Assembly (NCBI GenBank): GCA_002269645.1
Contig: NIVC01003400.1
Coordinates: 35,702-99,701 of the forward strand
DNA length: 64,000 nucleotides
Direction: 5' to 3'
DNA from: Macrostomum lignano
Lineage: Eukaryota
A program made the position numbers and the translations under genes. The notes below the pieces were generated by a model. That model saw only the letters and a list, made by a program, of their open reading frames with translations, was not told the origin of the DNA and searched no databases. Below, piece after piece: positions 884-44,624 of this stretch (positions are counted from its first letter, which is position 1; every line of letters starts with the position of its first letter).

Positions 884-1520
884 CTAGCTAAAACACATTG
901 AGCTGGCGGCTTGCACCCCCATGGTTAACTGGCTGTTCAAAATTGGTTTCTGAGCCTTAATGTACATAGCCTCGAGAATGTTAAATTTGTTTTCTTTGCT
1001 ACAAGAATCGATCACTTTAAACATATCACAACAGCTCTTATTGCAGCAGGAGTTGCACGTGAGAAGGTGCTCATTGATGGCAGAATTTCTAATCCAATGT
1101 TCCTTAACCCTTGTGTACAAGTGTCGCTTGGTTTTACCAATGTAGGAGATGTTCTGATCCACAGAACAATGAAATTTATAGACGACACCTGCAACAAGTG
1201 GTCCAGGAACACGGGACTTCAACCTGCAGACAAACTGAGCAATCTTTTCCGTACGGAACAAAACCCGGAGCTGGAAATCAATGTGACTTCTAAATAAATT
1301 TTCCACTTTCTTCCCAAACTCCATGGAGCAGAGGCCTAAATAAGGCACCACAATAACGGGACTACGATCATTACTGAGATCATTCTTCTTGAGTATGATT
1401 TTGACCAGAAAACTTCTTGCAGAGAAACCTATTAATGATGCCGGAAATATGGCCACGAGGGTATCCATTCATCATGAACAGCCGAGTAAGCTGCTCCAGC
1501 TCATCATGAAAAAGCTTCCA
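884..1520 (-). pseudogene. Frameshifted PLE pol remnant (linker + GIY-YIG)
   Basis: The linker frame (ORF 1380..1967) stops at 1380. The GIY-YIG frame (ORF 884..1468) continues in a shifted frame near aagaagaatgat (~1375-1390). Confidence 0.8.
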
Positions 1521-1872
1521 GACAAAAGACAGGAAGAAGTGACAGAAGATAGGAAGAGGGGACAGAAGACAGGAAGGAGCGACAGAAGACGGAAGAGGTG
1601 ACAGAAGACAGGAAGAGGTGACAGAAGACAGGAAGAGGCGACAGAAGACAGGAAGAGGTGACAGAAGACAGGAAGAGGGGACAGAAGACAGGAAGAGGGG
1701 ACAGAAGACAGGAAGAGGTGACAGAAGACAGGAAGAGGTGACAAAAGACAGGAAGAGGTGACAGAAGACAGGAAGAGGTGACAAAAGACAGGAAAAGGTG
1801 ACAGAAGACAGGAAGAGGTGACAGAAGACAGGAAGGAGCGACAAAAGACAGGAACTGAAGCGACAGAAGACA
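1521..1872. repeat. 20-bp minisatellite (gacagaagacaggaagaggt), heterogeneous
   Basis: About 17 imperfect 20-bp units, same monomer family as 1-649. Confidence 0.95.
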
Positions 1873-1928
1873 GTGATGGCAAACAAAGAAGGAATGGTTA
1901 TTGGGTCGGTTATCATAAAAGCACTCAC

Positions 1929-2672
1929 TCTCCCAGGCACAGCTGGCACTGTCTCCATGTGAGCCACATCTGCCGATAATCTGTCTGGTTGAGCAGGCTG
2001 GGTGCATTGTTGTGCGCGACCACCTCAGGATCCAGAGTTGATCGCAGAATGCAGCGCGAGTTTCCGAAGGCACCAATAGTTGCCTCATAGTCAACCTATT
2101 AGGGGTAATGGACAGCTCATTCATTAACAACTTGGAAAAGTAAACTTGCATTAGCATCTAAATTTAACAACTCTTAAAAAAATAAAATTATTCCCACTAA
2201 AAAATAAATACTTTTATACATATTTAGTGTTATATTTATATGTTGAATTAAGGCCCTACCATTTCCTGTGGTCCACAAAGAGAAATGACAGCATCTGAGA
2301 ATCCTTTCACATCAAATAGCACACCAACACTATGCTTCACTTCGGTTGAGCGGCATAGATAGTCTGGCGATTTCGATGCAATCACCTCTGAAATAAAAAA
2401 ATCAATTTAAACTGTCATGTATAGTTGCAACTGTAAATATAAAAGTAAAAAGTAAAATTACATCAAACAGTAAACTAAGAAGTCTTTGCCCCACTTCTAT
2501 TGATTTCTAATTAACAAACCTACCGATTTTTTAAATTTTGACTTTCTAAATTTGTATATTTTTACTGGCTAGCTAGGATGGGCTGTTTGCATTCTGGAAC
2601 TGATAATAGTTAGTAAAGAACATTGCACTTACCAATGTATTGAGAGACATTTCGAGAGGGTGAACAACCCAT
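1929..2672 (-). CDS. Farnesoic acid O-methyltransferase (Methyltransf_FA)-like domain protein with N-terminal MGCxxS motif. 5' three exons: 2672-2633, 2387-2260, 2095-1929; continues beyond window start
   Basis: Spliced read MGCSPSRNVSQYIE-VIASKSPDYLCRSTEVKHSVGVLFDVKGFSDAVISLCGPQEM-VDYEATIGAFGNSRCILRSTLDPEVVAHNNAPSLLNQTDYRQMWLTWRQCQLCLG. It matches the family pattern FxVk..DAxIxL..YExxIGxxGNxxxxxR..W. Donors gtaagt, gtaggg, gtgagt and acceptors tttcag, aatag are phase-compatible. Confidence 0.72.
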
Positions 2673-4888
2673 TCTGGGGCTTTAATATAAGCAAATACTT
2701 AGCTTTCTTAGCTTAACTTCACAGTAAATTAAAAAAAATTTTTTACTATTACAAATATAAATTAGAACAAGTTACAGACAGACGTGAGACAGTCAGTCAA
2801 TGGACAACTAAGTTGTTCAGATCAACAACAGCTTGCTTGGTACTGTATTAATTTTCCGAAAGTTTGTAAAATATTTTATGAACAAGCTCTACTTTATGTC
2901 TGTTTCACTTGTGCCACGAATATTAGGGTTAAAGAAAAACAGAATAATTAACGACTAAATAGTACGAACAGGACTTCTAAATCACAACGGGAGCACAAAG
3001 GTAAAAAAGAACTTCGACCGTTACTAATATACACACAAAAAACTCACAACAACAGCTCTTATGCTGTCAAAACAGTTCTGCAGGCATTTATCATTAAAAC
3101 TTTACTTCAAAAAGATCAAAGATTTTTTTTATCTTAGCAAGATTTGATTTACTACGCTAACATATTCAAAGTTTGATAAGCATGTTGTTTTCTACGAAAC
3201 AGTATAGATTAATGAGTGACGTGACGTCGGTGACGACCATGCAATCTTACTCTTAATCTTTGTCTTATGTAAGGCAGTAAGGGTTATGTCCAGGGGCAGT
3301 ACGTCTATGTATCAGTTTTAGTCCTTATACTCCTAAAAATCTATTTTAATCATTGACTTTGAAGCATAAGTTAAATTTGGATAAAATTGAAATGAACTTA
3401 GCTTTTTAGTCTATTTTAGACTAAACTTAGTCTATTTTAGTGAGTTTTAAATTTGGTAATAGTCAATTTTGATAACAAAATTTGGCAATAACTAGTTTCG
3501 CAGTAGAATAAGTTAATATAAATATATTATAATAACAATCCTTAATTATTTTAATCTTATTTCTTTTATTACATTGGCTATAGTCAAGTCCCAGGGTCAG
3601 GATTGTATACTGCTGTATGCCAGAACAAAAACTGCTTCCATAGCTCATGTATGCCAATGGTATGCCAACAAACTTTTTATTGCATACAGAAATATGCCAA
3701 AATAAAAATACAAATTATGACCAATATTAATTAATAGCTTGCAAAATTTTAATATTTAAAAAATTAATATGTTTAAACTAGTATTTTTTTACTAAACTGT
3801 ATAGAAGTAGTTTATTTTTACTATTTTTGTTTTACTTTTAACTTCTTAGAAAAGTTAAATTGGGTTTTTAAATTTAGTTTGAATCTATTTTTTCATTAAG
3901 GGCTAGCTATTCCTTCTAATCAAAATTTAGCTATTGTAAATGTAACTATATGTACATGGAGACTACACCAAATGTAAACTTAAACATTTTGTATACTAAT
4001 TGTATAGATTGATGGGGACTCAGAACTTTTAGTCCCACTTACTGTCTTGACAATTTCTATATGCCAAGCTGTAGGCCTATGCCAAAAGGGCACACCAGGT
4101 CCCTCTATATATCAAGTTGTATGCAAATGGTGTACTATAAGTCCCTCTGTATGCTGGAATTTTCCGGCGTACATGTATACCATCCAGAGTCTGGCTATAG
4201 TCATAGATAGTAAAAGGCAATTATAAGTTAAAAGAATATTTGGCACTTGAATATAATAAAATTGTAGCATCAATATACAAATCAATGATAAACAAATATT
4301 ATAATATATTGTAAATTGAAATCTGCAAATGTTGCTGATTAGCATTTGTCTATTATATAACTAACTATACTTGTTAATACCATATACAAAAAGAAAGATC
4401 TTTAAATATCTCTCCCCTCTATGGCTACTTGTGTCCAGTGCAAGGTGTATTTTGTTATTGTTATTTTATAATATATCAAAAAACATTGTTGATTGACTTT
4501 ATACAAAGTATAGGTACAACATAAATTTCATAGATCCCATGCGTGTGACATACATTTACATCTGTTGCCTGGTTATAGTATTTTTAGTGCATTTAACTGC
4601 ATTAAGATAGCCCTAAGTTTGTATATAGCATTTGGAAAAAATATTTAGATGGGTGGGAAGATGTCAGAGTGTCAGATGGGAGGACATATTGTCATCAAGT
4701 AATCTAAATTGTTAGCTTATCACAATCCTATCAGTTGTGAAACCAGTTGCAGAAAGACAGATGCTTGCTGATAAGGGCCAAAATCATATAAAAATTCTGT
4801 ATGGCACAAGCCACTTCTGCAAAATTGATTGAACACCTGATCTGCATTCATTGCAACCTCTGGGTGGGTGTGCAACAGAGCCAGGATG

Positions 4889-5378
4889 ATAAGCAGCAAG
4901 GGTGCCAGCCAGAGCAGCAGGGGTGCCAGCCAGAGCAGCAGGGGTGCCAGCCAGGGCAGCAGGGGTGCCAGCCAGGGCAGCAGGGGTGCCAGCCAGAGCA
5001 GCAAGGGTGCCAGCCAGAGCAGCAGGGGTGCCAGCCAGAGCAGCAGGGGTGCCAGCCAGAGCAGCAGGGGTGCCAGCCAGGGCAGCAGGGGTGCCAGCCA
5101 GAGCAGCAAGGGTGCCAGCCAGAGCAGCAGGGGTGCCAGCCAGAGCAGCAGGGGTGCCAGCCAGAGCAGCAGGGGTGCCAGCCAGAGCAGCAGGGGTGCC
5201 AGCCAGAGCAGCAAGGGTGCCAGCCAGAGCAGCAAGGGTGCCAGCCAGAGCAGCAGGGGTGCCATTCAGAGCAGCAGGGTGCCAGCCAGAGCAGCAGGGA
5301 TGCCAGTCAGAGCAGCAAGGGTGCCAGCCAGAGCAGCAGGGGTGCCAGTTAGGACAGCAGCTCTGGCTGGCACCCTGA
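4889..5378. repeat. 21-bp GC-rich minisatellite (gagcagcaggggtgccagcca) ending in one inverted partial unit
   Basis: About 22 units. ctctggctggcaccctg at ~5361-5377 is the reverse complement of the unit. Confidence 0.95.
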
Positions 5379-6128
5379 AAAATTTCAAAAAGAAAAATTT
5401 CTGATCGAACAGTGCAAGTTCGAAGAAAATCGGTCCAGCCGTTCGGGAGAAAATCGATTGCGCACAAGCAAACATACAAATAACTCATTTTTAGTGTATG
5501 GAAATGAAAAAAACTTGAAAAACTAATGCACATGTTTCGGTGTACAGAAGAAATGACTTGCAGTTTTGGGTCACTCCATGAGAAGGTATGCTCTACCATA
5601 TCCCAGCCATAAAGTTTTTCGACAATTTCAGATAACTTCGACCGAGAGAATAGTAAAATTTATTTTGTGTGAAAGTTTTAGAAAATGTGTTTAACTCGAC
5701 ACGAGGATTTTTCACAGTAAATTTCAATTTAAATGACCAATTTAACACATTCGTTCCCGTTCATTCGACGTGTCTATCTTTAGAATTTGAATGGAAGCAA
5801 TGAGCAACTGACGTGGTGATTGATCAATGATCAGCACAATGTTTTGCCTGATTTGCTAGTTGCTTGATTGCAGAGTTTCACTGTTAGGCCTTTGCTGTCA
5901 GGATTGGCACGCTGTATCAACTTCCGTTTTGTTAGTTAACGCGCCTCGGTATTATTATCCTTCTCCCGCAACTGGTCCCTAGGTTTGGCCTGGAACACCA
6001 CCCACGCACAAATGATGACTTTGAATTGCGCGTGATTTTAAATCGGTTTCTTTAATCCGCTTCACAATTGTGTCTTAGTTGGTTGCTGAAACAAAATCTA
6101 AATTTTTCTTATCCTCTCCGGACTTCAT

Positions 6129-6248
6129 CCAATCAAGTGTTGTGTGGCGCATTCGTGTGTCTTCCGAGCACGAGCTCAGTCCGACAAAGTTATGATTTCG
6201 CAGCTATCCGGCCTATCCAATCAGCTTGCCGTTGAATTCTCTATAAAA
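6129..6248 (+). promoter_or_regulatory. Core promoter of the small secreted-peptide gene: two CCAAT boxes and a TATA box
   Basis: ccaat at 6129 and 6217, tataaaa at 6242-6248. A non-coding first exon ends at donor gtaagt 6327; branch-like ctactgac and acceptor tttcag at 6417. Confidence 0.6.
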
Positions 6249-6458
6249 ATGGCAGCACGGTAGTCGCCGACACAGACGCCAGTCTGAAACTGTTGAGAAT
6301 TGTCCTATTATCTAACGTGTCTTCTGGTAAGTGACTCTGTCTGCTGGCTGTTCAACGTATTCTAATAAGTGTTTTCAACTAGCTCCAAGTTTACAAACTT
6401 GCTACTGACCATTTCAGATTCTTCAATATCGAAAGCGCTCACAAAAAGAAGCCAAATC

Positions 6459-6854
6459 ATGCTGAAGATTCGCGCCGCTTTTGTTGTCCTCCTGCTGACT
6501 GCCTGCGTGCTGGCCGGGTTAGTTTTAGTTTGATTTTGTTTATCTAGCATGTATTTTGTGTTGCAGACACCTGACTATGCAGTGCAATAAGTTGCATTTC
6601 TCAATTGCAGCAATTCCGTGTCCGGCAGCGAGGTCTCTAACAATCGGATCTGCCGTCTGGTTGAGGCCATGGCTCGGGTGAGTCTCGGTGCCAGTCGGTT
6701 ACAAAAGATCCCATATTCGCGCATGAAACATGCAGATTTTCTTGAACTTTTCTTAAACTTGCAGGTTGCGGACTGCGACTCCGTGCCAGCTGGCATCGAC
6801 AATGTTTACCTGGGCAAGGCGCTGGAGAAACGCCGCGATCGATTCCGCGGCTGA
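6459..6854 (+). CDS. 71-aa secreted prepropeptide, neuropeptide-like. Exons 6459-6517, 6611-6677, 6765-6854
   Basis: MLKIRAAFVVLLLTACVLAGNSVSGSEVSNNRICRLVEAMARVADCDSVPAGIDNVYLGKALEKRRDRFRG*. Hydrophobic signal peptide, GT-AG introns (gttagt..ttgcag, gtgagt..ttgcag) in compatible phases, dibasic KR site and C-terminal Gly. Confidence 0.75.
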
Positions 6855-8910
6855 TGGAACGTCAACAGCTGATTTGACCACAAGACTTGTTTTGTTTCTT
6901 CAACATTCTGCCCAGGAACTGAACTGTTCTAAGAATCCCTTCTATCTCCCGACTAAGTCTGTGTATTTCGTTTTTTGAACTATCTATAACATCACACTTG
7001 AGTTTCTGGAGACTCGCTAGTGATTAGGAGAATGTTTTTTTGAACGATATCAACTTCGACGATAAAAGCACAGCTTGTGATAAACTGAAACTACAAATAT
7101 AATACACAATTATCGACTGGCTGAGTGAGTCTGTTGCTGACAGTTCTTCAACTGCCCGGTCGAAAGAGAGAGAGAGAGTTGTTAAATTGCAAACCATATA
7201 ATATCTTCCTGTTTGGTCTTGGTTTTTTTACTATGATTGTAAAATCCTTGGTTAGGATCTTGGTCTGATTGGACACTTGTCTTCTAGCTTGTTTGGCGTA
7301 TTCGATGCTTGTGGTCAAGCTCATTGAGCAATCTACAGTATAATAATTATTTTGACAATCTTAAAGCAATTATTTGTCTCCTGTCAAAAGCGCTCTCGCC
7401 TACACAAATAATCTACGAAGTAAGTTTAGTGTCTTTCAATCGCTATCGATGTGTAATCTTCTTAAGCAACACTTTCTTCAGTGCCTTTTAGCCAGTAGCA
7501 TTTCAAATCTTCGTCAGTTAAAACAAAAAATATGCTTGAGGTGTGTGAAAGAGGCTAATTTTAATGTTAACAGGAGCTTGCGATGGCACAGGCATTGAAC
7601 AACAGGGATTGACGTTAACTATTTCTGCTGAGAACTGCGTCTTGTTGGCGTTCTTGGCCGCATTCAATCCAGCGAAGGTTATCGCTTCAATTCTATCTAG
7701 GAGCGGCTGTAATCCCACAACTAAGCCCTGTGCCTTATCATGCAGCTGCGGCGGCAGCTGAACCCAAGCCTTGATCTCACTTCTATTGACTCAAAGCTTA
7801 TCTGCGTAAGCTAAGGAATTAATCGACTTATCATTCGAAAATTACTTTTTTCGAGTGAGAAAAAATGAGTTATTGCCTAGTTCAGTTGCATTTTTTACTA
7901 GACTCATTTCCATTTTTTTGCTGCACCAGTTCTTGTACAAGGATAGTGTTGCAACACCGCTACAGGATCTACAAGTTAGTACTTGAATGTGCCATGTATC
8001 GTTGCGTCTGCACACGGCTCTTCTATGGATCCTGCACTGCGCTTATGGTTGTCATGCTTTACGACCTAGCAAAGATATAAGACAACCGTTTTTACGATTG
8101 TAAACTTAAAAAGAAATGAGTTTCTCTTCAAGTTAATGCAGGTCTATTGGTGTAAGGCACTGAAATGGAACGTCATCCTATCTTCAGTTTTTTAATTCAA
8201 AATTCGTGCGGCTATTTATGGAAGTTTTTCAACCTACCAGACCAGACCTTAAGCTGACGAAGCTTTTGCTTCGGAAATTGCCTTCTTAATTCATTTGCTT
8301 TTTTGCCGAACTGCTAAAACATGAGAATTTTTGGTCAAAGAAACTTGAGCCTTCGGGGAATCGCAACTAATTTCCGTGCTAATTAGCACTGTCGAGTAGG
8401 ATCGGAGCTGTGTTGGAGCGAGTCTTAAAACCGCTTTGAGTTATTGTTGGCGCAGTATGGGGCGAGCAGAAATCCGTTTGATTCCGAGGTGGCTCCTTAA
8501 TTTCCTTCTTTTTTTACTGAGGCAAGTACTGGAATTTTAATCCTGGATTTCCACTGGTCCCTTGGGCATCGGCCTTATTATCCTCACATGATGAGATATG
8601 CATCGAGACGCGTTGGATTTATGCCAATTTCCTCCATCTTTTGCGAAGCAGATTAACCTCAGATTAGATCGATTTGGTCCGAGTCTGAATCCTTAGACCA
8701 TCTACATTCGATTTTGTGCTAGAAAAGTGAATTTATTCTATTTTTGTTGTTTTCCCTGAAAAAACTCAACTTTTATATGCTTTACAATGATGTAGAATAA
8801 ATGCTTATCACAATAGTGACCCTTCTAATTGGCAAAACTTCAAAACTCCACCAAATACAGATCAAATCACTGCAAGCAATTTCAGCCACCTGACCTATTC
8901 GCTCAGTAAA

Positions 8911-10082
8911 ATGTCGCTTGAAGCAATTCGCTACGCCAATGGCGAGCTGTCAATTATTGATCAATTGCTTTTGCCGCATCAGACAGTGTACATTCGTATC
9001 GCCAGCTGTGAGGAAGCCTGGTCAGCTATTAAAAGGATGCAGGTGCGTAATTTTGTTACATTGCGTCTTGACATTGAGAGCATACAGCTGCATCTAATCT
9101 CTGGATTTCTCAGGTTCGTGGCGCCCCAGCCATTGGCATTGTTGGCAGCTTAGCCATGGCTGTAGAGCTGAAATCGCCGGACACCCTGTCTCAGGTGGAC
9201 AGTTCGGCAAAATTGTCCGCCTGGTTAGGCGCCAAATGGGACCGACTGGTGTCGGCCCGTCCAACTGCCGTCAATCTGCAGGACAGCCGCGAACGGATGT
9301 TTCGCCTTCTATCCACCGACTGGTCAGCAATGGACGTAGCCGGTCAGCGTCTGGCCGCTGTGGAATGGCTGGAGTCGCAGCTGGAACAAGATGTCCGCTC
9401 CTGCCGAGCCATTGGAGAGGCTGGCGCCAATGCCCTACTACAAAGTGTCGAAGAGCGCGGCCTCGTACCGCCTGGTGGCCAAGTGAACGTGCTGACTCAC
9501 TGCAACACGGGCTCTTTAGCCACCGGAGGCTACGGCACCGCACTAGGCGTTGTGCGCAGCCTGCACAATCGAGGGCGCTTAGGCCGGATATTCTGCACAG
9601 AGACTCGACCCTACAACCAGGGCGCCAGGCTCACAGCCTACGAAATCGTTGCTGACGGGCTGCCGGGCACTCTAATCTGCGACAGCATGGTTGCCGCGGC
9701 CATGGCAAGCGGCCGAGTGCACGCTGTTGTCCTGGGTGCCGATCGGATCGTGTCCAACGGCGACACCGCGAACAAGATTGGCACCTATCAGATTGCCGTA
9801 CTGGCTCGTCATCATTCCATACCGTTCTTCGTGGCGGCGCCTCTTACTAGCATTGATTTTAGCATGCGCACCGGTTCCGAGATCGTCATCGAGGAGCGGC
9901 CGTCCGACGAGTTGGCCTGCGTTGCCGGCCAACGAATTGCTTGTCGCGGCATTGACATCTGGAATCCGGCGTTCGACGTTACTCCGGCCGAGCTAATCAC
10001 GGCCATAGTGACGGACACGGGCGTGGTGCCCCCAAATAATGTTGCAGCTCTGGCTAAGAAGCTGGGGGCCGAACAGGGCTGA
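8911..10082 (+). CDS. MRI1: Methylthioribose-1-phosphate isomerase, 366 aa. Exons 8911-9042, 9114-10082
   Basis: MSLEAIRY...IDQLLLP...MQ|[63 protein letters not shown]. One 71-nt GT-AG intron. Confidence 0.97.
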
Positions 10083-12727
10083 AGAACAGGCACTGAAAGG
10101 GAAGACAAATAATTGAAAATCTTGGTATTAATTTGCCGATTGCTAGTGCTGCATCCGATTCAAACCTCATGAAATTCTTGACTTAGTAGTTTGAGACGCA
10201 TTATTCCATCAGCGCTAATCCAGGAGAGATCATCAATCAATAGGATAACGTTAAAAATCTTTACAGAGCTTTGCACGAAAATGAAACGACTAAATTTTTG
10301 AACTAATCCTATATAAGTTAACACCAATTGATACCTCTAAATGGAATCAAGAGGGGAGTTAATTAAAAGTGTTACTCCTGCTCTTTCTGGTCTGAAATTC
10401 TATATAGTAAATGCTTTAGTCATTCATTTGCGTGCGGTTTTATTTTCTAATTGATCCTTTAAATCCGATTGTCTATGCAATGGTTTTAGTTTACATAAAT
10501 TATTATCTTGTGTCGCATTAAACTTCCATTAATTATAATTCATAAAATGTTCGCAGTTTATTTGACTAGTTATTACAATATTTCACGCATAATATTTCAG
10601 AATCATTTAAAGTTTTCTTACTTATTCGTCTTGCACAAATTTCGTCAAACTTCACAATTGTTAGTTACAGCAATGATATCAATGATATGGTATTTATTTC
10701 ACACTTGAAAGTAGCGACATCCTAAATACTAGCTCGGATATACCAATCTACAATGTAAAAGCCCTCTCTCAAAGCAAACATGTACTTTGGTATGAGGTGG
10801 CCGTCCAAGAATGCTCTTGAGATGGTTGAAAAATATCGATCAAAACTTTGCAGTACGACATTGAACTCGGCTAAAGAGCTATATCGATGTAAAATAAAAT
10901 CTCATCTGCTGAGTGAGTTTTGTGTCTAATTGGCTCCCTCTTGGCAGAGCCTTTTGCGTCTCTAGCTCTTCAATAGCAAAAGTGTGTGACAAATATGATA
11001 ACACGTCGTTCGCTTAACGTCCAAAATTCTTACGATATGTCACAAGTTCAACTCTGTCGAGCCACAATGACGTACAAGGTTTCTTTTTCTTTTGGTTTTG
11101 TTGTGTATTGATGATTTGTCATTGTCCTTTGCCGTCTTTTTTGCAAAGTAATCCAATGGCTGTCGAAAGACTTTAGAATCTCACCGAGGACAAAGTTAAC
11201 GCGCTCGATTAACGGGCTCAATTCAAGCTTCATTTGTTCTCATTTTCAGCACCTGGTAATTATCTTACGTTCGAAGAAGAAAGAGGTGAAGACCGTCATT
11301 ATACATTTAGATAAGTGTTGAATATAGTAACATAATAGCATGGCATATCAGTTTCTGTCAATGGCCGCTCAAAAAAATTAATTACACTCGCCTCGTTCAG
11401 GATACACGTAGGCATGATTTTATTCGTACATGATTGTAACAAATATACAACATGCGCCAGCATGTCAGTCGATGTTGATCGCAATTCTTATGCTTTCTTT
11501 CAAACCGATTCAAGGACCACTGAAGTTACGGTAAAGTCGTACTTCATAGTTAATATCATGAAGAAGTAAACTTCGGTTGTCCATGACAATTTAGTTGTCT
11601 ATGGTTAGGTTGTGCACTAGCCATGCGTTTGTTCACTTCGACAATTTACTTGTATTTTGAGCTTGGTAATAAAGAACGTCGGCATCCCGAGGAGCCCGTA
11701 GTAAATCGTTTTAGCGTTTCTAGTTCAATCAAACCTTGAGCTAGGCTTTTCCCCGCCCAGCATTTAAAGGGTTAAATCGATTATTTTTATGGCAAAACTA
11801 TAAAGTTTTTTCGAAAGTCTCGATTTTCCGGTACTAGTTAAAAGCCAATTAGCAGCTTTTAACAAAAAAACAACCTGGCAAATCCAATTTGCTTGAAGAT
11901 TAAGATTTTGAATGCATTTTGGATAATTTTTTAAATTTAGTTAGATACTGCAATAACCATATTCAAAATAAAAGATAAGAAATATTTTCACTTGTATCGC
12001 AACTTTCAGGATTCTTTGAAAACTTCCGTCTGAATTGGGACACTAGAAGCGGTCGGTCATCAAACGAACCCACAAATTCTAAACAAGCATCGAATATTAT
12101 ATTATGCTACGAATTTTTTATTTGAAGATAAGTAAAGGCAACTCAAAAACTCAATTTTTGTGCATTTCAAGTTTTGCATGTCTCGTTTACCCGCGGCCTA
12201 ACCCTAATTCCATCTGAATGACCGAATCTGATGAATGAATCTCCCTTTCATGGTCATAAGTAAAATGACACTTTACTTTTGAAAATTGGTCGAGTAATGA
12301 ATGAAAAGGTTACAAAACTTCACAATAAATTTGCCAATTTGGTAGTATGATAATTTTGGCATAAAGTTAGGCCTAGTTTCTTATCAATATTGGTAGGCTA
12401 GTCCTTTACTTTTGTTCATTCAATTATTTTCTTTAAAGATTTGTAATTTATGTTTAGGCTAGTTTAATGATGAATGCTATAACATATTTATAGAAATACC
12501 TATAAGTTTTAACATATAAATTGGCAACTGTCAACTAGTGAAACTGGTAAATGGGTAGTCCTATAGATAAAATAGCAACAATAAATAGTGGTTTTAGGTG
12601 CTGGTAAGAGGCCAGCCATGGCATAGTTTTGTTAGTGCACCATGTCCCATGATAATTGAGTTGCTTGAGTTGAGTCTACTGCATCTGCCTGCAATGATTG
12701 ACCACTAAGTTTACCTATCCTACTAAA

Positions 12728-18132: not shown

Positions 18133-21100
18133 ATGTTGCAACTGCAGCAGGGAATCTGTGACTCGCCATTATCAATGGAGTCTCTAATTAAAAGTGGCTC
18201 ATTGTCATCCAATGATAAGGAGTTTTTACAGCAGTTTTCTAATGATGCAAATATGAATGCAGTAGTGAAATTGTGCGACATTCTTGAAGGCTATCTGGCT
18301 AGACGAGTGGCTCCTGTCACGCCGAGCGCACTAGAGGATGTTGTCGAGGTGATTAATGCCATTTTTTCTATTTGTATCGTGTGTTTCTTGATAAAGTAGA
18401 CATTTTTATAAACATAGATTATTAACTCAATGGCATTATCAGATTAGCTCATGTTTGCTAATCATGTCTATCACTCAGGTATCTGTTCCCTTAATTAGGC
18501 TATCGCCCAGGTATCTGCTCCCTAATTAGAGGCTATCGTCCAGGTGTCTTCCATAATAAGCTTTCGCCCAGGTGTCTGCTCCCTAATAGGCTTTCGCACA
18601 GGTGTCTGTTCCCTAATAGGCTTTCGCCCAGGTGTCTGCTCCCTAATAGGCTTTCGCACAGGTGTCTGTTCCCTAATAGGCTTTCGCCCAGGTGTCTGCT
18701 CCCTAATAGGCTTTCGCACAGGTGTCTGTTCCCTAATAGGCTTTCGCCCAGGTGTCTGCTCCCTAATAGGCTTTCGCCCAGGTGTCTGCTCCCTAATACT
18801 GTTAGAGTCTTCCGCACAGGTGTCTGTTCTCTAATAGGCTTTTGCACAGGTTTCTAGCTTAGTAATTTTCACTAAGCTATTCGCAACTAGACAAAAGCAA
18901 CCCCTCCGCCAGAAATAAAATAATTTGATATTCATATTGCCTTGTGCATTGCCCAAATCGCAGGCCTACGACTATTTGCGCTGCCATCCGCACGCCGAAG
19001 GCTGTCACGAATTGGTACATCTATTGCGCAAGCCGCATATGAAAGCCTTGATCCAGTGTCACGATGACCTAGCTAATCGTACCTACGGCCCTAGACTATC
19101 GCCTGTGCCTCACGAGGTCGATGAAGACGATGTTAGCGTGAAAATTGTCGAGTTGGTGAAGCAGGACGAGCCGCTAGGCGCCACTATTAAGATTAATGAG
19201 CGAACCGGGGCCATCCTCATTGCCCGGGTGATGCACGGAGGACTGGCTGATCGCAGCGACCTGCTGCAGGCCGGGGACGAAGTTCAAGCTGTCAATCAGG
19301 TTTGACTGATCGGCTTGTATCTTGGGGTCTGTCTGTACACGAGTCTAGCTAGCGAGCAGATCAGTGAGGCATCTAGCTAGCGGGCAGATCAGTCTGGAAT
19401 CTAGCTAGCGGGCAGATCAGTGAGGCATCTAGCTAGCGGGCAGATCAGTCTGGAATCTAGCTAGCGGGCAGATCAGTGAGGCATCTAGCTAGCGGGCAGA
19501 TCAGTGAGGCATCTAGCTAGCGGGCAGATCAGTCTGGAATCTAGCTAGCGGGCAGATCAGTGAGGCATCTAGCTAGCGTGCAGATCAGTGAGGCATCTAG
19601 CTAGCGGGCAGATCAGTGAGGCATCTAGCTAGCGGGCAGATCAGTGAGGCATCTAGCTAGCGGGCAGATCAGTGAGGCATCTAGCTAGCGGGCAGATCAG
19701 TGAGGCATCTAGCTAGCGTGCAGATCAGTGAGGCATCTAGCTAGCGTGCAGATCAGTGAGGCATCTAGCTAGCGGGCAGATCAGTGGGGCATCTAGCTAG
19801 CGGGCAGATCAGTGAGGCATCTAGCTAGCGTGCAGATCAGTGAGGCATCTAGCTAGCGTGCAGATCAGTGAGGCATCTAGCTAGCGGAGATCAGTGAGGC
19901 ATCTAGCTAGGGTGCAGATCAGTGAGGCATCTAGCTAGCGGGCAGATCAGTGAGGCATCTAGCTAGCGTGCAGATCAGTGAGGCATCTAGCTAGCGGGCA
20001 GATCAGTGAGGCATCTAGCTAGCGGGCAGATCAGTGGTGGCCAAGTGTATTAAAATGTTTTTGTAATGAAAGGCTAATGCATTTGAAATTGGCATTTACT
20101 CATTCGCAGGTGCTAGTGGCCGGCCAGGACCCCATGACGGCTATTCGAATGCTGACCACCGCCCGTGGCAACGTCCGACTCTCCGTACTGCCGTCTGAGC
20201 GCAGATCCTCGTCAACAGCTGGAGGCGTTGGGAGCGTCAGCAGCGGCGGACAGCAACAAGTCGGTGTCAGTCCGGCCACCGTGCGAGTGCTATTCAACTA
20301 CAACCCAGCGGATGACGGGCTCATACCGTGCCAAGAGGCTGGACTCTGCCTGCGGCTAGGCGACATCTTGCAGCTGGTTAATCGCGAGGACGGCGATTGG
20401 TGGCAGGCGGTCAAGGAGGGCGACGCCAGGCGGCGAGCCGGTCTGGTGCCCAGCACGGATCTGCTGCTTCGGCGGTATCAAAAGCAGCAGCAGCTTCAAC
20501 AACAGCAGCAGCAGCAGGGCCGAAGATCGAGTGTAAAGTCCACGGCGTCCTCGGCCACTTCGTCGCCTTCATCTCCGGCAACGGCGCATCGAGGTTAGTG
20601 GAAGTGTGGCGAAGCTTGATTTCATTTTGTTAGGTGAAGATTTTTATAGCGCTTCTCAACTTCATGTATTTGTGTACAGCGGCCATGTGTAAGTGTATGT
20701 GTACACAAAGCCAAATAGAGATTTATGTGGGGCGAAACTCCCATGCACCCAGCGCCAACTAGGGATTATAGGGCGCCAAAATCCCATGCACCCAACGCCA
20801 ACTAGGGATTATAGGGTGCCAAAATCCCATGCACACAGCGCCAACTAGGGATTATAGGGCGCCAAAATCCCATGCACCCAGCGCCAACTAGGGATTATGT
20901 GGCGCCAAAATCCCATGCACCCAGCGCCAACTAGGGATTATAGGGCGCCAAAATCCCATGCACCCAGCGCCAACTAGGGATTATAGGGCGCCAAAATCCC
21001 ATGCACCCGGCGCCAACTAGGGATTATGTGGCGCCAAAATCCCATGCAACCAGCGCCAACTAGGGATTATGTGGCGCCAAAATCCCATGCACTCATCGCC

Positions 21101-30324: not shown

Positions 30325-31200
30325 AGCTTTCATATCTCCGAAGCTTCATGTCTCTGTAAGGGTTAAAAGTTATGCTTAGGGTTAGGTTTAGGGTTTGTCG
30401 GAGATATGAAGTGTCTGGGATATGTTGTGTCGGAGAGATGAAGTGTCGGGTGTGAAGTCTCGGGGATATGAAGTGTCCGGGACATAAAGTGTCGGGGATA
30501 TGAAGTGTCCGGAATATAAAGTGTCCGGAATATGAAGTGTCGGCGATATGAAGTGTCGGAGAGATGAAGTGTCGGCGATATGAAGTGTCGGAGAGATGAA
30601 GTGTCCGGGATATGAAGTGTCGGAGATATGAAGTGTCGGCGATATGAAGTGTCGGAGAGATAAAGTGTCCGGGATATGTTGTGTCGGAGAGATGAAGTGT
30701 CTGGGATATGTTGTGTCGGAGAGATGAAGTGTCCGGGATATGTTGTGTCCGAGAGATGAAGTGTCCGGGATATGAAGTGTCGGAGAGATGAAGTGTCCGG
30801 GATATGAAGTGTCGGGTGTGAAGTCTCGGGGATATGAAGAGTCCGGGATATAAAGTGTAGGGGATATGAAGTGTCGGGGATATGAAGTGTCTGGAATATA
30901 AAGTGTCCGGAATATGAAGTGTCGGCGATATGAAGTGTCGGAGAGATGAAGTGTCGGCGATATGAAGTGTCGGAGAGATGAAGTGTCCGGAATATGAAGT
31001 GTCGGGTATGTGAAGTGTCCGGAATATGAAGTGTCGGAGATATGAAGTGTCTGGAATATAAAGTGTCCGGAATATGAAGTGTCGGCGATATGAAGTGTCG
31101 GAGAGATGAAGTGTCGGCGATATGAAGTGTCGGAGAGATGAAGTGTCCGGAATATGAAGTGTCGGGTATGTGAAGTGTCAGCGATATGAAGTATCGGAGA
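30325..31200. repeat. Complex ~17-19-bp satellite (gatatgaagtgtcgg) with inverted units and a telomere-like spacer at the left end; probably a non-autonomous element
   Basis: More than 40 atgaagtgtc cores. Inverted ttcatatctccg/cttcatgtctc at 30329-30355, then ttagggttaggtttaggg at ~30376-30393. Confidence 0.85.
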
Positions 31201-31703
31201 TGCAATTTTTTGGCCACTGGTTTTGATGGGGCGGAAACCTTAATGTGTTGCTGAGAGTACTTGTAGTACTTTTGTAGTAACGATGTACTCAATAGAAACA
31301 GGACAGGCACACAATTGCAATGAGAGCAATATAATCTGTTTCTCATTGGCTCGAGGGCGGAGGAGGAGGCGCTAGCTATTCATGAATTATCGGAGTTCCA
31401 CGGCTATACATGAACACGGATCTACAATAGTCATACTGAAAGATATGATATCGTGCGCATGCAATCCAGCAATGCTGTACGTGGGCATGGACTTATGAGA
31501 GGCAATTTTGTTACGCAATTGCACGTTTAAAATTTCGATATTTGCTAAAAATATATCGCTCAAATCCTCAAAAGCATGGTGATCTATAACCTTTAAACTT
31601 GTAATCTTGAGCCAAAAATTTTGTAGATTTCATTTGAGGGATCGCCAAAGCTACTTCAAGGGGTGGCGCATATACAGGTACGTATACTTTTGTCAAGTCA
31701 AGA

Positions 31704-32022
31704 AGCGGCGTAAGGGCTAGGGTAGGGCTAAGGGTTAGGGCTGGGGCTAGGGCTGGGACTAGGGTAGGGCTAAGGGTCAGGGCTGGGGCTAGGGTAGGGC
31801 TAAGGGTTAGGGCTGGGGCTAGGGTAGGGCTAAGGGTTAGGACTGGGACTAGGGTAGGGCTAAGGGTTAGGGCTGGGGCTAGGGTAGGGCTGGGGTTAGG
31901 GTAGGGTAGGGCTGGGGCTGGTAGGGTTAGGGCTGGGGTTAGGGTAGGGTTAGGGCTGGGGCTAGGGTAGGATTAGGGCTGGGGTTAGGGTAGGGTTAAG
32001 GCCGGGGCTAGGGTGGGGCTAG
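31704..32022 (+). repeat. Degenerate telomere-like hexamer array (GGGTTA/GGGCTA/GGGTAG/GGGGCT)
   Basis: About 50 G3-containing hexamers on the + strand. Confidence 0.9.
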
Positions 32023-32207
32023 GTTTCGGGCTCTTATCTAATCTGTCTATCGTTTGTTTTAACTGGAACCAGCAGAAACAATTGTACCAATCAGTTAAGT
32101 ATTTGGTATCCGAGATGGGGGTATGTTTTTGATCGCCAATTAATGTCCTAGATGACACAAAATGCCCTCGCGAGCTCATGTACATGTACACATGCAAGAT
32201 GCTGCAG

Positions 32208-35200
32208 TCACACGGTGGGCCTAGTTCTCAGCCGCTCAATAAACCCATTGACCCGCTGCATCGGTCTGCTGCCGGAACTCTCTCCTCCGCCGCCGTCGCC
32301 GTCACCGTCGCCGCCCCGCCGCCGGCCGCCGCCGCCGGCGCTCAACCGATCCCTGATGGCGGCTATCCGACGGCCAAGCCGGCGCACCTTTTGAATGACC
32401 TCCTCCTGCATCAGCTTGAAGCACATGGCGAATACGGACAGACCGATGGCCACGTAGAACACCGTGGCGATCAGCTTCTCCTTGGGATTCTCGCTGTCCA
32501 CCGTTGTACCTGCGGGGCGTGGCGGGCATCCAAAGTTGAAAGCCTACATAATGAAGACAGGTCGGGCCATAGACAGCACGCAGATTTCTGACAATCTGAC
32601 ACCCCAACTTATTCTGACTCTCGGTCTTTGCCAGCTTTGAACAGCTCAGGAAAGTCTGAGCTTTTTGAATTTTCAGTCAGCAATGAACATAGTTACTTGC
32701 AAAGCACTTCAAGCGCCCTTATCATGTCGGCGACAAGGGGCTGCACTGTCAGTCAAACCATAATAAGTTCAAATAAAAACCGACGCCATGAGCAGCTAAG
32801 GCCCGGCAGTGTTAAGAGGGCCTAGCCAGCAAATTTACTGGCTCTGCTAGGATAATCAGGCCTAATGCGTGCGCCGGAGCGTGTCACCGCAATTTAGTGG
32901 CCCGGGTTTGGGGCGGTAAATCATCTGCGGCCGTCTCTAAGACTTTCGCGCGCCCACAAGCCCATATCGCTCACTTGTCCTCGTGGCTCTGCATACGAAG
33001 GCCAGCTTTCTCTCCCGTTGTTTGTGCTGGTGGGATGAATTTTCGCCTCGATTTTTTAACGCACCTTCACTCCGGCGCTTTTTTGGGTGCAGGCGGCAGG
33101 GTTTTGGGACACTTCGGGGCCCGCGCCCATAGCGAGACAGATAGACGGTATAGTTTACGATTTTTCACTTGAACCGTTTCCGCGGTCCTTCTTCTGCAGC
33201 TCTCAATTTCACTTTTTTTAGTGCCGGCTTTCGGCTGACTGGCTGAATATATTAATTGCTGTTTCCAAAACTGACGGCAACTGATAATTATATTTGGCCC
33301 TTTGATGCAGCCCTCGGATTAGCTTACCTTAGACTTCTCAGCCTAGCTGGCTTATCTCATTGTTTTACGAGCTCCAAATTTGCATTATCAAACAACTAGT
33401 CCCAGTTCATAGCCCTGTAGTACAGTTCCCCTTCGAGGTTCAAGATGATTCCCCTATTTATTCCCTTCATTAGAGCCCTTCGACACAAGATTGTCTCACC
33501 TGGCACAATATCACCGAAGCCTATTGTGCTCAACGTGATGAAGCAAAAGTATGACCATCTGATGTAGTTTTTGTCCTCCTCCCAAATTGTGAATATCAGT
33601 GCGCCGAATATGATGTACAGAATCATCACAGAGACGGACAGGGACAGGGGCACCGTGACCTGGTGCAGCGACAGGCCCTTCATCGAGTCCTTTTCGTCCT
33701 CCTCCTCCACCACAGTCGGTGTTGTCGGCGTTGGTGGCTCGTGCACGGACACGTAGCTGCACCGGCGCAGCATCGGGTTGCTGCCGGCCGCCTCCTGCAG
33801 CCACGGCGCGTTGGCCAGCGGCTCGGCCCCCACCGCCGACATCGACAGGCTGAATGGGCGACACGGAGCTCGCGACGGTTGCGCTGGTAGTGGCGGCGGC
33901 GGCGGTGGAGTCGAAGACGGCGTCGTGATAGTTGTCATCGGCGACCCAGCCCCGGCCGTCACCTTCGCCGACGCCGCATCCGGGTTTTCGGCGAACTCGG
34001 CCGGCGAGGCGGCCGCGGCGAGCCCAGCGGAGATCGCCAGGGGTGCGGATCGAGTCCGCCTGACGTTAACCGCCTCGGAGTGCTCCAGCGCAGCCGCTGA
34101 CGCCACGGGAGGCTCGGCTACCGTTTCGGGCGCTTCTGAGAACTCTTCCCAGTCGATTAGTGGCACCTGCTGCAGCTCGTCGCTGGTCCAATCCATGATG
34201 GCCTTCTGCGAGATGGGCGTCTGCACCTCGTCCATCAGCGGATTAACAGCGGCGAAGCAGTCTCCGTTCTCCGTTACTAGCGGGGCGACGCCGCCGGACG
34301 GTGGCGATGGCGGCGAGGCCAAGGAGGTTTCGTGCGCGGGCAGCACGCGGGCCATCACGTAGGCCACCCGGATGGTGGCAGCGGCGCTGGCCAGGTGCAG
34401 CGGGTTCGACTCGATCAGCGGTCGCGTCCGAACGGGCGTTGCTGCCGTGTGCTGCGGCGTCAGCGGCAGCAGCGGCCGCTGTTCGAGCATCCCGACAGTC
34501 GGCACCATCGGCGTCGCTCCCGTCGTCGTCTCATCGTCCTGCCGGTCGTCGCTGTCGCCGAGGTTCTCGGCCGTCCAAGCCTGCAGCCGTTCGGTGAGCC
34601 GGTGCAGGCGCACGTGCGACAGAGAGATTGGAATCTTAGCAGCCACCGCGCGCTGCCACTCGAGCGCCAGGGTGCGCGCGCGCTGGCGCGTCCGCTTGCG
34701 GAACACTCGGCGCCAGAACGGGCGAAAGGCGTCCCGATAGAAGAGGCGAAACGCGTCGGCCAAGTAGTCGCCGACGTTGTTGAGGTACAGAAAGGTGAGC
34801 GGGATGCCGAAGAAAGCGTAGAGCATGGTCAGCATGTAGCCGCCCTCTGTCTTGGGGACCACTTGCCCGTAGCCTGGAAGCAATTTGTGCGGTTCGTTGC
34901 AATATTTTTCACAGCATCAACAAAATTTCCGCAGACTGTATTTGATGGCAGTCCAGTCGATCAGCTCAAGTGGAAATCGGCATCAACAGAGGCAATCGGT
35001 TTATTTTTAACCAGCTGCTCACTCCCTCCCTCTCTCCATCTCAATCAGTTTGCACTGGTGTTCTATTTCGCCGAGCCTCTTTATCTCAGTTTTGTCTAAT
35101 CCGGTGCTGGTCGTCGAGAGGCAGAGAGCTCCCCCCTCTAGGAGGAGAAACGACAAAAGCAGCAAGCGACCTGCCCACGGGAAGAGCATTAATCCTTTTG

Positions 35201-38200: not shown

Positions 38201-39260
38201 TCTCTCCTTGTCCTTTCTCTTTCTTTTCTTTTTTATATACAATGAAACTTTGCCCTCTTAATTTATAGATAATCAAAAACCGCCACTCAATTCGCTAGCG
38301 ACGGGGGCTATAGCCACTGCACCGCAGTCATGCCCATTCTGTAGATCCCTGGGCATGCATAAAGCACTGGGATTCGTACTCAGCTCACGGCACTGTCTGT
38401 CATACAGGGTGTACAGAGGTACCCTAAACCTAAACCTAACCCTAACCCTAACCCTAACCCTAACCCTAACCCTAGCCCTAACCCTAACCCTAACCCTAAC
38501 CCTAACCCTAACCCTAACCCTAACCCTAACCCTAACCCTAACCCTAGCCACTCCCACACTATTGCTCAGCAATGAGGTGCGGCCGCTCACCAATAGTGGT
38601 GATCACGGTCACGACGTACAGCAGCGCGCCGGAGAAGCTCCAGTTGAGATCGGCGTCATCGTAGCGGCCGTTCCAGCCGTCATCAGTCAGCCGCTTGATC
38701 AGCTGCCGGCTGAACTCGCGCATCTGGGCGGCGAATCGCCGTTCAAAGTCCTGCACGGCTGCCGCCGCCTGCGAAGACATGTTGCCGGCTGCCCCGTCTG
38801 CCGCCGCCGCCGCTGCCAGAGCGACGTTGGTCTGACTGGAGTTCCACCGACGCAGCCACCGTTGAGCCTCGTCGAGCAGCTGGCCGCTGACATTTTTCAC
38901 GGTGCTGTCCAGGTGGTCTCTGGCGGCGGCCTTCACTCGCAACTCGTCGCCCTGCTCAAGCCGACGGAACAGCTCTCCGCCAATGATGACGTACAGAATA
39001 ATGAGGCTGGACAGGCCCAGATTGGAGAACATGAATGCCAGGAAATGCTTGCAGCAGGTCACCGTCTCTTTGATTCGCTTCTTTCGACGCTGCCGACGGG
39101 CGTGCCGTCTCCGCTGCGACTTGGTGTTGTCGGCTGTCGAGGTCATAGCGGTCATGTTGATGGGGGCAGAGCGCTGGCTCTGCATCGGGGCTCGCACGGT
39201 GGGCCGCACTGTCGGGCGGGACATCTGCGGCCTCGGCCGCGGCGGCTGACTGAGCTCCAT
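32208..39260 (-). CDS. Two-pore-domain K+ channel (K2P, invertebrate TWK/TRESK-like), 781 aa. Exons 39260-38591, 34873-33500, 32509-32208
   Basis: M1, cap, P1 WSFSGALLYVVTVITTIG|YGQVVPKT, M2 TMLYAFFGIPLT, long loop, M3 VPLSLSVSVMILYIIFGALIF, P2 YFCFITLSTIGFGDIVPG|TT, M4 IATVFYVAIGLSVFAMCFKLMQE. Both introns are phase 1 GT-AG. Confidence 0.93.
35867..36280. repeat. 21-bp minisatellite in K2P intron 1
   Basis: Unit ctctgctgacactgtgaatct, about 16 near-perfect copies then decay. Confidence 0.96.
37428..38095. repeat. Pyrimidine-rich ~11-bp repeat (tcactccctt(g/c)) in K2P intron 1
   Basis: Direct reading. Confidence 0.93.
38422..38546. repeat. Interstitial telomeric repeat (CCCTAA)n, about 21 units
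   Basis: Near-pure CCCTAA. Reads (TTAGGG)n on the K2P sense strand about 44 nt into intron 1. Confidence 0.95.
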
Positions 39261-40029: not shown

Positions 40030-41745
<1,716 letters not shown>

Positions 41746-44010: not shown

Positions 44011-44624
44011 CTTAAAATATATATTTTCCAGACAAATAATTCTCTGTCAAAAAGCCAACAAATGAAAAATAATTGTAAGCCTTTACTTGAACAACCTGGC
44101 CTTGTTAGAACGAACGCAGGCCTGCATCAGTTTCAGCTGCTATTCTATGATTTTGAAATGTCTGTAAAAACGTGCCAAAGAGATTTGCATCCAGTCTGAC
44201 TATGGTTATAAAGTTACTATTTATAGATTTTCGAAGACGTGTTCAGGTTTGATTCCCTGTGCTTCAATATTTGCTGTCGTATGTATTTGCAAACTGAAAA
44301 TTAGCAATCCACAACCCTCTTCTCTTCTCTGTTCAACTAAGCCCGTCTTTTGTCTTGGAAAATAACTTTTAGAAAATACTGCGGTTTGTATGCAGATTGT
44401 TATGGCTCTTCTATAGCCAACAAGTTGGAGTGGCAACTTTTTTATATTTTTAGTTGCCAACCGGTCTGAATGCTTATGGTGTTAACATAGTGTCCACGGC
44501 TGCACAGTTGGGAAACATAAGGGAAACTTTTCAGTTTCTTTGTATCAATTAGCAGTATCTTATCTTCTGAAGTTACAAATAGAAAATGAAGCAGGTATCG
44601 ACTTTTCTAAGCTCATCCCAGCAC

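What the first reader, a model, noticed from the sequence alone, without database searches (positions are those of the whole stretch)
6242..6854. Cryptic four-exon gene encoding a small neuropeptide-like precursor
Seen: TATA box, non-coding exon 1, and three tiny coding exons giving a 71-aa protein with a signal peptide, two Cys (ICRL..ADC), an internal YLG-K and a terminal EKR-RDRFRG-stop. Established: dibasic cleavage plus a C-terminal Gly is the signature of amidated neuropeptides. Inference: it would release RDRFR-amide (or DRFR-amide) and possibly a ...DNVYL-amide or disulfide-linked peptide. I do not recognise the family, so it may be an undescribed signalling peptide. It is invisible as a single ORF.
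Basis: partly seen in the sequence, partly recalled or inferred. Interest (0 to 1): 0.7.

Follow-up and report, generated by a model that had tools for sequence, protein, structure and literature searches.

The report
Small secreted flatworm protein, candidate prohormone
The four-exon gene is real, but it is already in GenBank as an unnamed 71-residue secreted protein of the flatworm Macrostomum lignano, and the idea that it makes an amidated neuropeptide is plausible but rests on short sequence motifs alone.

Summary
Splicing 6459-6517, 6611-6677 and 6765-6854 gives the 71-aa protein exactly as described.

The gene is not cryptic. The protein is identical to GenBank PAA51565.1 (BOX15_Mlig028683g1, Macrostomum lignano) and UniProt A0A1I8I5P2, named "Secreted protein". 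These gene models come from an RNA-seq-guided transcriptome. A second genomic copy, g2, is 98.8% identical over 10.4 kb and differs by one residue, V37I.

Nothing outside M. lignano resembles it:
- 5.8 billion clusters
- 1.84 billion representatives
- Pfam

Tests against NPF/NPY, FMRFamide-like, luqin, CRH/DH44/ELH and PDF families all failed.

It meets the operational prohormone criteria used for planarians: a signal peptide, a basic site (K64-R65-R66) flanking a predicted peptide, and fewer than 200 aa. It also ends in Gly. So release of (R)DRFR-amide is biochemically possible.

I found no expression, peptidomic or ortholog evidence.

Verdict: a real, already annotated, lineage-restricted secreted-protein gene. 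Its prohormone status is a reasonable hypothesis (about 0.4), not a finding. Interest is modest.

The parts
6129..6133 (+). distal CCAAT box (catCCAATcaag)
   Evidence: Pattern scan. Read directly from the sequence; function inferred.
6217..6221 (+). proximal CCAAT box (atCCAATcag), about 25 bp upstream of the TATA box
   Evidence: Pattern scan; function inferred.
6242..6249 (+). TATA box (TATAAAAA)
   Evidence: It is the only TATAAA in 5900-6330.
6272..6326 (+). putative non-coding exon 1. The start is inferred at about 30 nt after the TATA box. It contains no ATG and ends before the donor GTAAGT.
   Evidence: Sequence. The donor is kept in copy g2 despite an adjacent 6-bp deletion. No transcript data were seen here, so spliced-leader trans-splicing at 6418 is an alternative.
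6327..6417 (+). intron 1 (91 nt, GTAAGT...TTTCAG)
   Evidence: It holds 5 of the differences between copies g1 and g2.
6418..6517 (+). exon 2: 5'UTR 6418-6458 (no upstream ATG, A at -3) and CDS 6459-6517, which encodes the signal peptide MLKIRAAFVVLLLTACVLA(G)
   Evidence: translation. hydropathy: 9-residue means reach 3.07 over residues 6-19. UniProt names the entry 'Secreted protein'.
6518..6610 (+). intron 2 (93 nt, GTTAGT...TTGCAG). It contains an alternative AG at 6565-6566 that would shift the frame.
   Evidence: acceptor 6567 gives frame +2 and no stop before 6854. Copy g2 has C>A at -3 of that alternative acceptor. The annotated product uses 6611.
6611..6677 (+). exon 3: NSVSGSEVSNNRICRLVEAMAR (holds Cys34)
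   Evidence: The only coding difference between the two copies is here (6660 G>A, V37I).
6678..6764 (+). intron 3 (87 nt, GTGAGT...TTGCAG), in frame and free of stops
   Evidence: ORF 6618-6854 reads through it.
6765..6854 (+). exon 4 coding part: VADCDSVPAGIDNVYLGKALEKRRDRFRG + TGA. It holds Cys46, Gly59-Lys60, Lys64-Arg65-Arg66 and the terminal Gly71.
6855..7110 (+). presumed 3'UTR. There is no canonical AATAAA; the only variants are GATAAA at 7061 and 7079, AATATA at 7096 and AATACA at 7101. The end is not determined.

Best explanation
[quoted passage not shown] It is a small, transcribed, lineage-restricted gene with its own CCAAT/TATA promoter.

Shown: its three coding exons encode a 71-residue pre-pro-protein. 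An N-terminal signal peptide (residues 1-19 or 1-20) sends it into the secretory pathway.

Inferred, and the single most likely mechanism: the roughly 51-residue pro-protein is a peptide prohormone.
- A prohormone convertase (PC2-type) cuts at the tribasic K64-R65-R66.
- Carboxypeptidase trims the basic residues from the N-terminal product, residues 20/21-63. That product carries Cys34 and Cys46, a possible disulfide or dimer link.
- The exposed C-terminal Gly71 is converted by peptidylglycine alpha-amidating enzymes. This gives DRFR-NH2, or RDRFR-NH2 if the cut falls after R65.
- A second, weaker possibility is cleavage at G59-K60, giving a 38-39-residue ...DNVYL-NH2 peptide.
For: Gene and product:
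- The splice model is in frame.
- The identical protein is deposited by two sources, with the same 396-nt CDS span.
- GenBank Mlig models come from StringTie/TACO assemblies of RNA-seq plus a de novo transcriptome.
- A second genomic copy keeps every splice site and the whole ORF, with one conservative change.

Secretion:
- n-region K3 and R5.
- A 14-residue hydrophobic core.
- V-L-A at -3 to -1.
- UniProt names it 'Secreted protein'.

Prohormone reading:
- It fulfils the three operational criteria used to accept planarian prohormones: a signal sequence, basic sites flanking the predicted peptide, and fewer than 200 aa (PMC2953531).
- It is not similar to any other annotated protein.
- The terminal Gly lies 5 residues after a tribasic site.
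- A PC2 homolog is used as a pan-neuronal marker in M. lignano (PMC12435804).
- Amidated RF-type peptides are abundant in flatworms (established knowledge).
Against: - I found no evidence of neuronal or endocrine expression and no peptidomics. No ortholog is available to test conservation of KRR and Gly.
- There is one putative peptide copy only, and it is a very short, highly charged one.
- The amide would sit on Arg, not on Phe, so it does not match any flatworm RFamide family.
- The AlphaFold2 single-sequence model puts residues 55-70 in a helix, but at low confidence (pLDDT 55.7), so this says little.
- Small orphan secreted proteins in Macrostomum are also typical of gland and reproductive tissues (PMC7336406 abstract).
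Confidence: 0.4

Rival explanations
1. It is a secreted small protein that acts whole or is not amidated, for example a gland, defence, adhesive or reproductive secretion product. It would be a roughly 51-residue mature protein, probably two helices with one disulfide or a disulfide-linked dimer. The KRR and terminal Gly would be incidental parts of a basic C-terminal tail.
For: - The signal peptide is present.
- It is an orphan confined to M. lignano, as is usual for fast-evolving secreted proteins.
- It belongs to none of the neuropeptide families tested.
- The AlphaFold2 model puts helices at 30-43 and 55-70, running through the supposed cleavage sites, though at low confidence.
- The base rate favours this reading: small secreted proteins far outnumber prohormones (my estimate, an inference).
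Against: - The gene is absent from the complete table of published in situ patterns of reproductive and tail candidates (file 16 of PMC7336406).
- It is absent from the held neoblast and germline lists. Both absences are weak, because several files were truncated when stored.
- A tribasic site placed just before a Gly-terminated short peptide is what a prohormone looks like.
Confidence: 0.4
2. It is a divergent member of a known bilaterian neuropeptide family: NPF/NPY, FMRFamide-like, luqin, or CRH/DH44/ELH.
For: The resemblances are only superficial:
- an R-D-R-F string near the C-terminus
- a roughly 39-residue peptide directly after the signal peptide, followed by GK
- a Cys pair
- an 'EAMAR' string reminiscent of CRH
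Against: - Pfam gave no hit even at E<=10.
- Smith-Waterman scores against CRH, urocortin, sauvagine, DH44, ELH, two flatworm NPFs, NPY and PDF were within the shuffled range (p = 0.11-0.91).
- The Gly follows Arg, not Phe or Tyr, so there is no RF/RY-amide.
- There is no intron in the Arg codon before the aromatic residue, which npy genes have.
- There is no WRPQ/WRPH motif. The Cys spacing is 11, not 10, and the pair is on the wrong side of the peptide for luqin.
Confidence: 0.05
3. The transcript is real but the short ORF is not translated into a functional product. It would be a young or de novo ORF, or an annotation artefact of TransDecoder.
For: - It has no homologs.
- The ORF is very short.
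- Divergence between the two copies is too low to show purifying selection: 1 change in the 216-nt CDS against about 1% overall.
Against: - A complete n/h/c signal peptide is unlikely in a random ORF.
- The frame is maintained across two introns with strong splice sites.
- There is no upstream ATG and the start context is good.
- The ORF is intact in both copies.
Confidence: 0.1

Closest known systems
Planarian 'secreted peptide prohormone' (spp/npp) genes as defined operationally by Collins et al. 2010 (PMC2953531)
   Same: It is a short pre-pro-protein of fewer than 200 aa, with a signal sequence and a basic cleavage site flanking a predicted peptide. It has a Gly as amide donor and no similarity to other annotated proteins. 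It is lineage-restricted, as many spp genes are.
   Different: There is no cDNA/RACE, in situ or MS confirmation here, and no sequence similarity to any deposited protein outside M. lignano. It has a single basic site and one very short peptide, not multiple flanked peptides.
Flatworm FMRFamide-like peptides and NPF/NPY family
   Same: It has an Arg-X-Arg-Phe string close to the C-terminus of the precursor. A long peptide follows the signal peptide directly and is followed by Gly-Lys.
   Different: The amide donor Gly follows Arg, so the product would be ...RFR-NH2, not ...RF-NH2. It lacks the conserved npy intron in the Arg codon. There is no Pfam Hormone_3 hit and no similarity above shuffles.
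Luqin/RYamide-type precursors (PMC7041311)
   Same: The precursor contains a pair of Cys about ten residues apart. In parasitic flatworms the luqin peptide also sits at the C-terminal end of the precursor.
   Different: There is no WRPQ/WRPH motif and no Trp at all. There is no RF/RY/RW-amide. The Cys spacing is 11 rather than 10, and the pair lies N-terminal of the putative peptide.

Membership tests
Peptide prohormone (operational criteria of Collins et al. 2010, PMC2953531) | N-terminal signal sequence | tested here: met
   The n-region has K3 and R5. The hydrophobic core spans residues 6-19, with a 9-residue Kyte-Doolittle mean up to 3.07. V-L-A sits at -3 to -1. UniProt's automatic name is 'Secreted protein'. 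SignalP itself was not run.
Peptide prohormone (operational criteria of Collins et al. 2010, PMC2953531) | Basic cleavage sites flanking predicted or MS-confirmed peptides | tested here: inconclusive
   K64-R65-R66 precedes DRFRG, and the C-terminal flank is the protein's end. This is met at motif level only. There is one site, and no MS data.
Peptide prohormone (operational criteria of Collins et al. 2010, PMC2953531) | Shorter than 200 aa and not similar to proteins annotated as something else | tested here: met
   The protein is 71 aa. Pfam gave 0 families at E<=10. The only hits in 5.8 billion clusters and 1.84 billion representatives are itself and its second copy.
Peptide prohormone (operational criteria of Collins et al. 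2010, PMC2953531) | Gene model verified by cDNA | tested here: inconclusive
   The GenBank model with the identical product comes from an RNA-seq-guided transcriptome. I could not inspect reads or junction counts.
Neuropeptide (functional sense) | Expression in neurons or endocrine cells, PC2-dependent processing, a mature amidated peptide, a receptor | not testable with these tools
   The gene ID and peptide strings appear in no searchable paper. Supplements that were held contained no entry, and two papers had no supplements held.
NPF/NPY family | C-terminal R-X-R-F/Y followed by Gly (RF/RY-amide) | tested here: not met
   The C-terminus is R-D-R-F-R-G-stop. The Gly follows Arg.
NPF/NPY family | Conserved intron inside the Arg codon preceding the C-terminal aromatic residue (Collins et al. 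2010, Fig. legend) | tested here: not met
   The last exon, 6765-6854, encodes everything from V43 to the stop, with no intron near R67-F69.
NPF/NPY, CRH/DH44/ELH, PDF | Detectable sequence similarity to family members or profiles | tested here: not met
   No Pfam family at E<=10. Local alignment scores were not above 2000 shuffles (p 0.11-0.91).
FMRFamide-like peptides | Peptide ending in RF-amide (RFG plus a basic residue or stop in the precursor) | tested here: not met
   The precursor has RFRG-stop. The product would end in Arg-amide.
Luqin/RYamide type | WRPQ/WRPH-like motif with RF/RY/RW-amide; C-terminal Cys-X10-Cys | tested here: not met
   The protein has no Trp. The Cys pair is C34-X11-C46 and lies N-terminal of the putative peptide (against the features stated).

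The most novel reading that the evidence does not exclude
Mlig028683 is a Macrostomum-restricted neuropeptide or hormone gene that founds a new flatworm peptide family. A PC2-processed precursor would yield an Arg-amidated tetra- or pentapeptide, (R)DRFR-NH2. It could also yield a roughly 38-43-residue Cys-containing partner peptide that forms a loop or a disulfide-linked dimer.
Probability: 0.33. Interest if true: 0.45.

Novelty: new member of a known kind. Interest (0 to 1): 0.27.

Why it matters
If the prohormone reading is right, it adds one lineage-specific signalling peptide to the neuropeptide repertoire of M. lignano. This species is poorly charted for neuropeptides, and it is the one flatworm with routine transgenesis, so a promoter reporter and a knock-down would be easy.

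The peptide would be an Arg-amide rather than the usual flatworm RF-amide, a mildly unusual chemistry.

If the reading is wrong, this is one more orphan secreted protein among many.

Either way it opens no long-standing question. The gene model itself is already public, so the value lies only in the functional hypothesis.

Tried and rejected
1. Homology. I ran a word-indexed search of 5.8 billion protein clusters, an exhaustive phmmer search of 1.84 billion representatives and Pfam at E<=10. Only the gene's own two copies came back, so ortholog conservation of KR and Gly could not be tested.

2. Paralogs in the window. tblastn with word size 2 found nothing below E = 2 except the gene itself.

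3. Known-family resemblance. I noticed an 'EAMAR' string that looked like CRH and an 'RDRF' string that looked like NPF. Shuffle tests against CRH, Ucn1, sauvagine, DH44, ELH, two flatworm NPFs, NPY and PDF were all non-significant. I rejected luqin on its motif and on Cys spacing and position. I rejected NPY on gene structure.

4. Structure. The AlphaFold2 single-sequence model had pLDDT 55.7 and pTM 0.27. That is too poor for a fold search, so I ran none.

5. Non-coding RNA. Rfam at gathering thresholds on 5000-9000 gave nothing.

6. Literature.
   - Mlig028683 and the peptide strings RDRFRG, DRFRamide, DNVYLG, VYLamide, CRLVEAMAR and RFRamide occur in no searchable paper.
   - Supplements of Grudniewska 2018, Wudarski 2017, Brand 2020 and a 2026 differential-expression study hold no entry. 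Some of those files were truncated.
   - No supplements were held for the single-nucleus atlas preprint or the trans-splicing paper.

7. Selection between the two copies. There is 1 difference in the 216 nt of CDS, against about 1% over 10.4 kb. That is too few differences to say anything.

The look-up worked through ids P0001 and P0002.

Full report
**What is in the sequence**

[quoted passage not shown] The protein encoded at the finding is identical to GenBank PAA51565.1, "hypothetical protein BOX15_Mlig028683g1", on contig NIVC01003400.1 of assembly GCA_002269645.1.

I re-read 5800-7400 and spliced the three proposed coding exons in a script.
- The exons are 6459-6517, 6611-6677 and 6765-6854. 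They join to 216 nt in frame.
- Splice signals are good. The donors are G|GTTAGT and G|GTGAGT, and both acceptors are TTGCAG|.
- Upstream there is a TATAAAA at 6242 and two CCAAT boxes at 6129 and 6217.
- A stretch without ATG ends at a GTAAGT donor (6327). A TTTCAG acceptor follows, so exon 2 starts at 6418, one base later than a casual count suggests.
- No single ORF carries the protein.

**Is it more than a by-eye construction?**

Yes.
- The exact 71-aa sequence is held by NCBI and by UniProt (A0A1I8I5P2, automatic name "Secreted protein").
- The annotated CDS spans the same 396 nt.
- GenBank's BOX15_Mlig models were produced from a genome-guided transcriptome. That used StringTie/TACO on RNA-seq, a de novo transcriptome, and TransDecoder ORFs (PMC5730564). 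So the junctions are transcript-derived, although I could not see the reads.
- A second genomic copy, Mlig028683g2 on NIVC01004073.1, is 98.8% identical to window 1455-11840. This fits the neopolyploid genome of the species.
- That copy keeps the whole ORF with one conservative change, V37I, from G>A at 6660.
- It keeps the intron 1 donor despite an adjacent 6-bp deletion.
That acceptor would shift the frame.

The gene is therefore real, but "cryptic" and "undescribed" are not correct as a description of the gene model.

**Context**

The gene sits alone in a roughly 6.2-kb interval. A Methyltransf_FA-domain gene lies on the minus strand and ends near 2672. An eIF2B-family gene lies on the plus strand at 8896-10082. 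There is no paralog elsewhere in the window, and no Rfam family in 5000-9000.

**What the protein looks like**

Residues 1-19/20 form a textbook signal peptide. Basic K3 and R5 are followed by a 14-residue hydrophobic core whose 9-residue hydropathy means reach 3.07, with V-L-A at -3 to -1.

The remaining roughly 51 residues are:
- a polar Ser/Asn-rich start
- an amphipathic stretch that holds Cys34 and Cys46, 11 residues apart
- a Pro/Gly turn
- a basic tail with G59-K60, K64-R65-R66 and the terminal R-D-R-F-R-G

AlphaFold2 without an alignment gives helices at 30-43 and 55-70, but at pLDDT 55.7 and pTM 0.27. I did not use the model further.

**Relatives**

There are none outside the species.
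- The indexed search of 5.8 billion clusters returned only the g2 copy.
- An exhaustive phmmer search of 1.84 billion representatives returned only that cluster.
- Pfam returned nothing at E<=10.

**Mechanism**

Shown: the gene, its product and the secretory signal.

Inferred: the prohormone processing. The protein meets the operational criteria by which planarian prohormones were accepted: a signal sequence, basic sites flanking a predicted peptide, fewer than 200 aa, and no similarity to other annotated proteins (PMC2953531). M. lignano has a PC2 homolog that is used as a pan-neuronal marker (PMC12435804).

From established prohormone biochemistry:
- Cleavage after the tribasic K-R-R would leave DRFRG.
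- Its free C-terminal Gly is a substrate for amidation, giving DRFR-NH2. A cut after R65 would give RDRFR-NH2 instead.
- Cleavage at the monobasic G-K would give a 38-39-residue ...DNVYL-NH2. This is possible but less likely.

I computed the masses for a peptidomic test.

**Why I do not rate this higher than about 0.4**

The supporting features are short motifs with appreciable chance frequency.
- A terminal Gly occurs in about 7% of proteins.
- At least one dibasic pair in 50 residues occurs in roughly 40-50%.
- Prohormones are a small minority of small secreted proteins (my estimate).
- There is one short, very charged candidate peptide and not a series of flanked copies.

The equally weighted rival is a small secreted protein that acts unprocessed, such as a gland, defence or reproductive product. 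Macrostomum is known for fast-evolving, lineage-restricted secreted proteins.

The literature gave no expression data. The gene ID and peptide strings occur in no searchable paper. The gene is absent from the held supplements, including a complete table of published in situ patterns. Several tables were truncated when stored, and two key papers had no supplements held.

**Comparison with known families**

- FMRFamide-like and NPF/NPY: not a member. The Gly follows Arg, not Phe or Tyr. The npy-type intron in the Arg codon is absent. There is no profile or pairwise similarity.
- Luqin type: not a member. There is no WRPQ/WRPH motif and no Trp. The Cys spacing is 11 rather than 10, and the pair is on the other side of the peptide.
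- CRH/DH44/ELH and PDF: the resemblances I thought I saw were within shuffled expectation.

The gene is best described as working like a generic "secreted peptide prohormone" candidate of the planarian spp kind. Family membership is open.

**Verdict**

The gene is already public as an unnamed secreted protein. The neuropeptide hypothesis is reasonable, cheap to test in this transgenic-friendly species, and unproven. Novelty is at most a new member of a known kind, and interest is modest.

Noticed in passing
window 6678-6764: Intron 3 of the gene is 87 nt, in frame and free of stop codons. Retaining it would give a 100-aa isoform with the same N- and C-termini and a 29-residue insert between Arg42 and Val43.
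   Followed up: partly
window 6564 (L001 equivalent): The alternative frame-shifting acceptor AG at 6565-6566 has C at -3 in this copy but A in the second genomic copy (g2). This suggests the alternative acceptor is not under constraint.
   Followed up: partly
window 1455-11840 vs L001 (NIVC01004073.1): A second genomic copy of the whole 10.4-kb neighbourhood is 98.8% identical (74 mismatches, 26 gap openings). It includes the Methyltransf_FA gene, the peptide gene and the eIF2B gene. It is a homeolog or allele of the neopolyploid genome.
   Followed up: partly
window, whole (e.g. 5-649, 19344-20036, 30396-31201, 40033-41745, 42925-44018, 54086-55172): The window is dense with minisatellite and microsatellite arrays: 40 TRF rows with score >=200, including (AGAT)x428 and a 15-mer x72. 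Most long ORFs in the six-frame list are translations of these arrays. For example, the Pfam Pentapeptide_4 hit of 54116-55423 lies on the 15-bp repeat.
   Followed up: partly
window 38421-38546 and 31713-32023: There are interstitial telomere-like repeats: (ACCCTA)x21 at 96% match, and a degenerate GGGTTA/GGGCT-type array of about 310 bp.
   Followed up: no
window 33396-34883 (-), 57152-58243 (+), 8896-10082 (+): Other genuine coding regions are a two-pore-domain K+ channel-like ORF (Ion_trans_2, E 6e-20), a Na/K-ATPase beta-subunit ORF (E 4e-56) and an eIF2B-family gene (IF-2B, E 4e-75).
   Followed up: partly
window 4892-5348: A 21-bp tandem array (x21.8) lies about 0.9 kb upstream of the gene's TATA box. 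It produces overlapping long ORFs on both strands (4720-5599) with no Pfam match. It is probably non-coding repeat.
   Followed up: no
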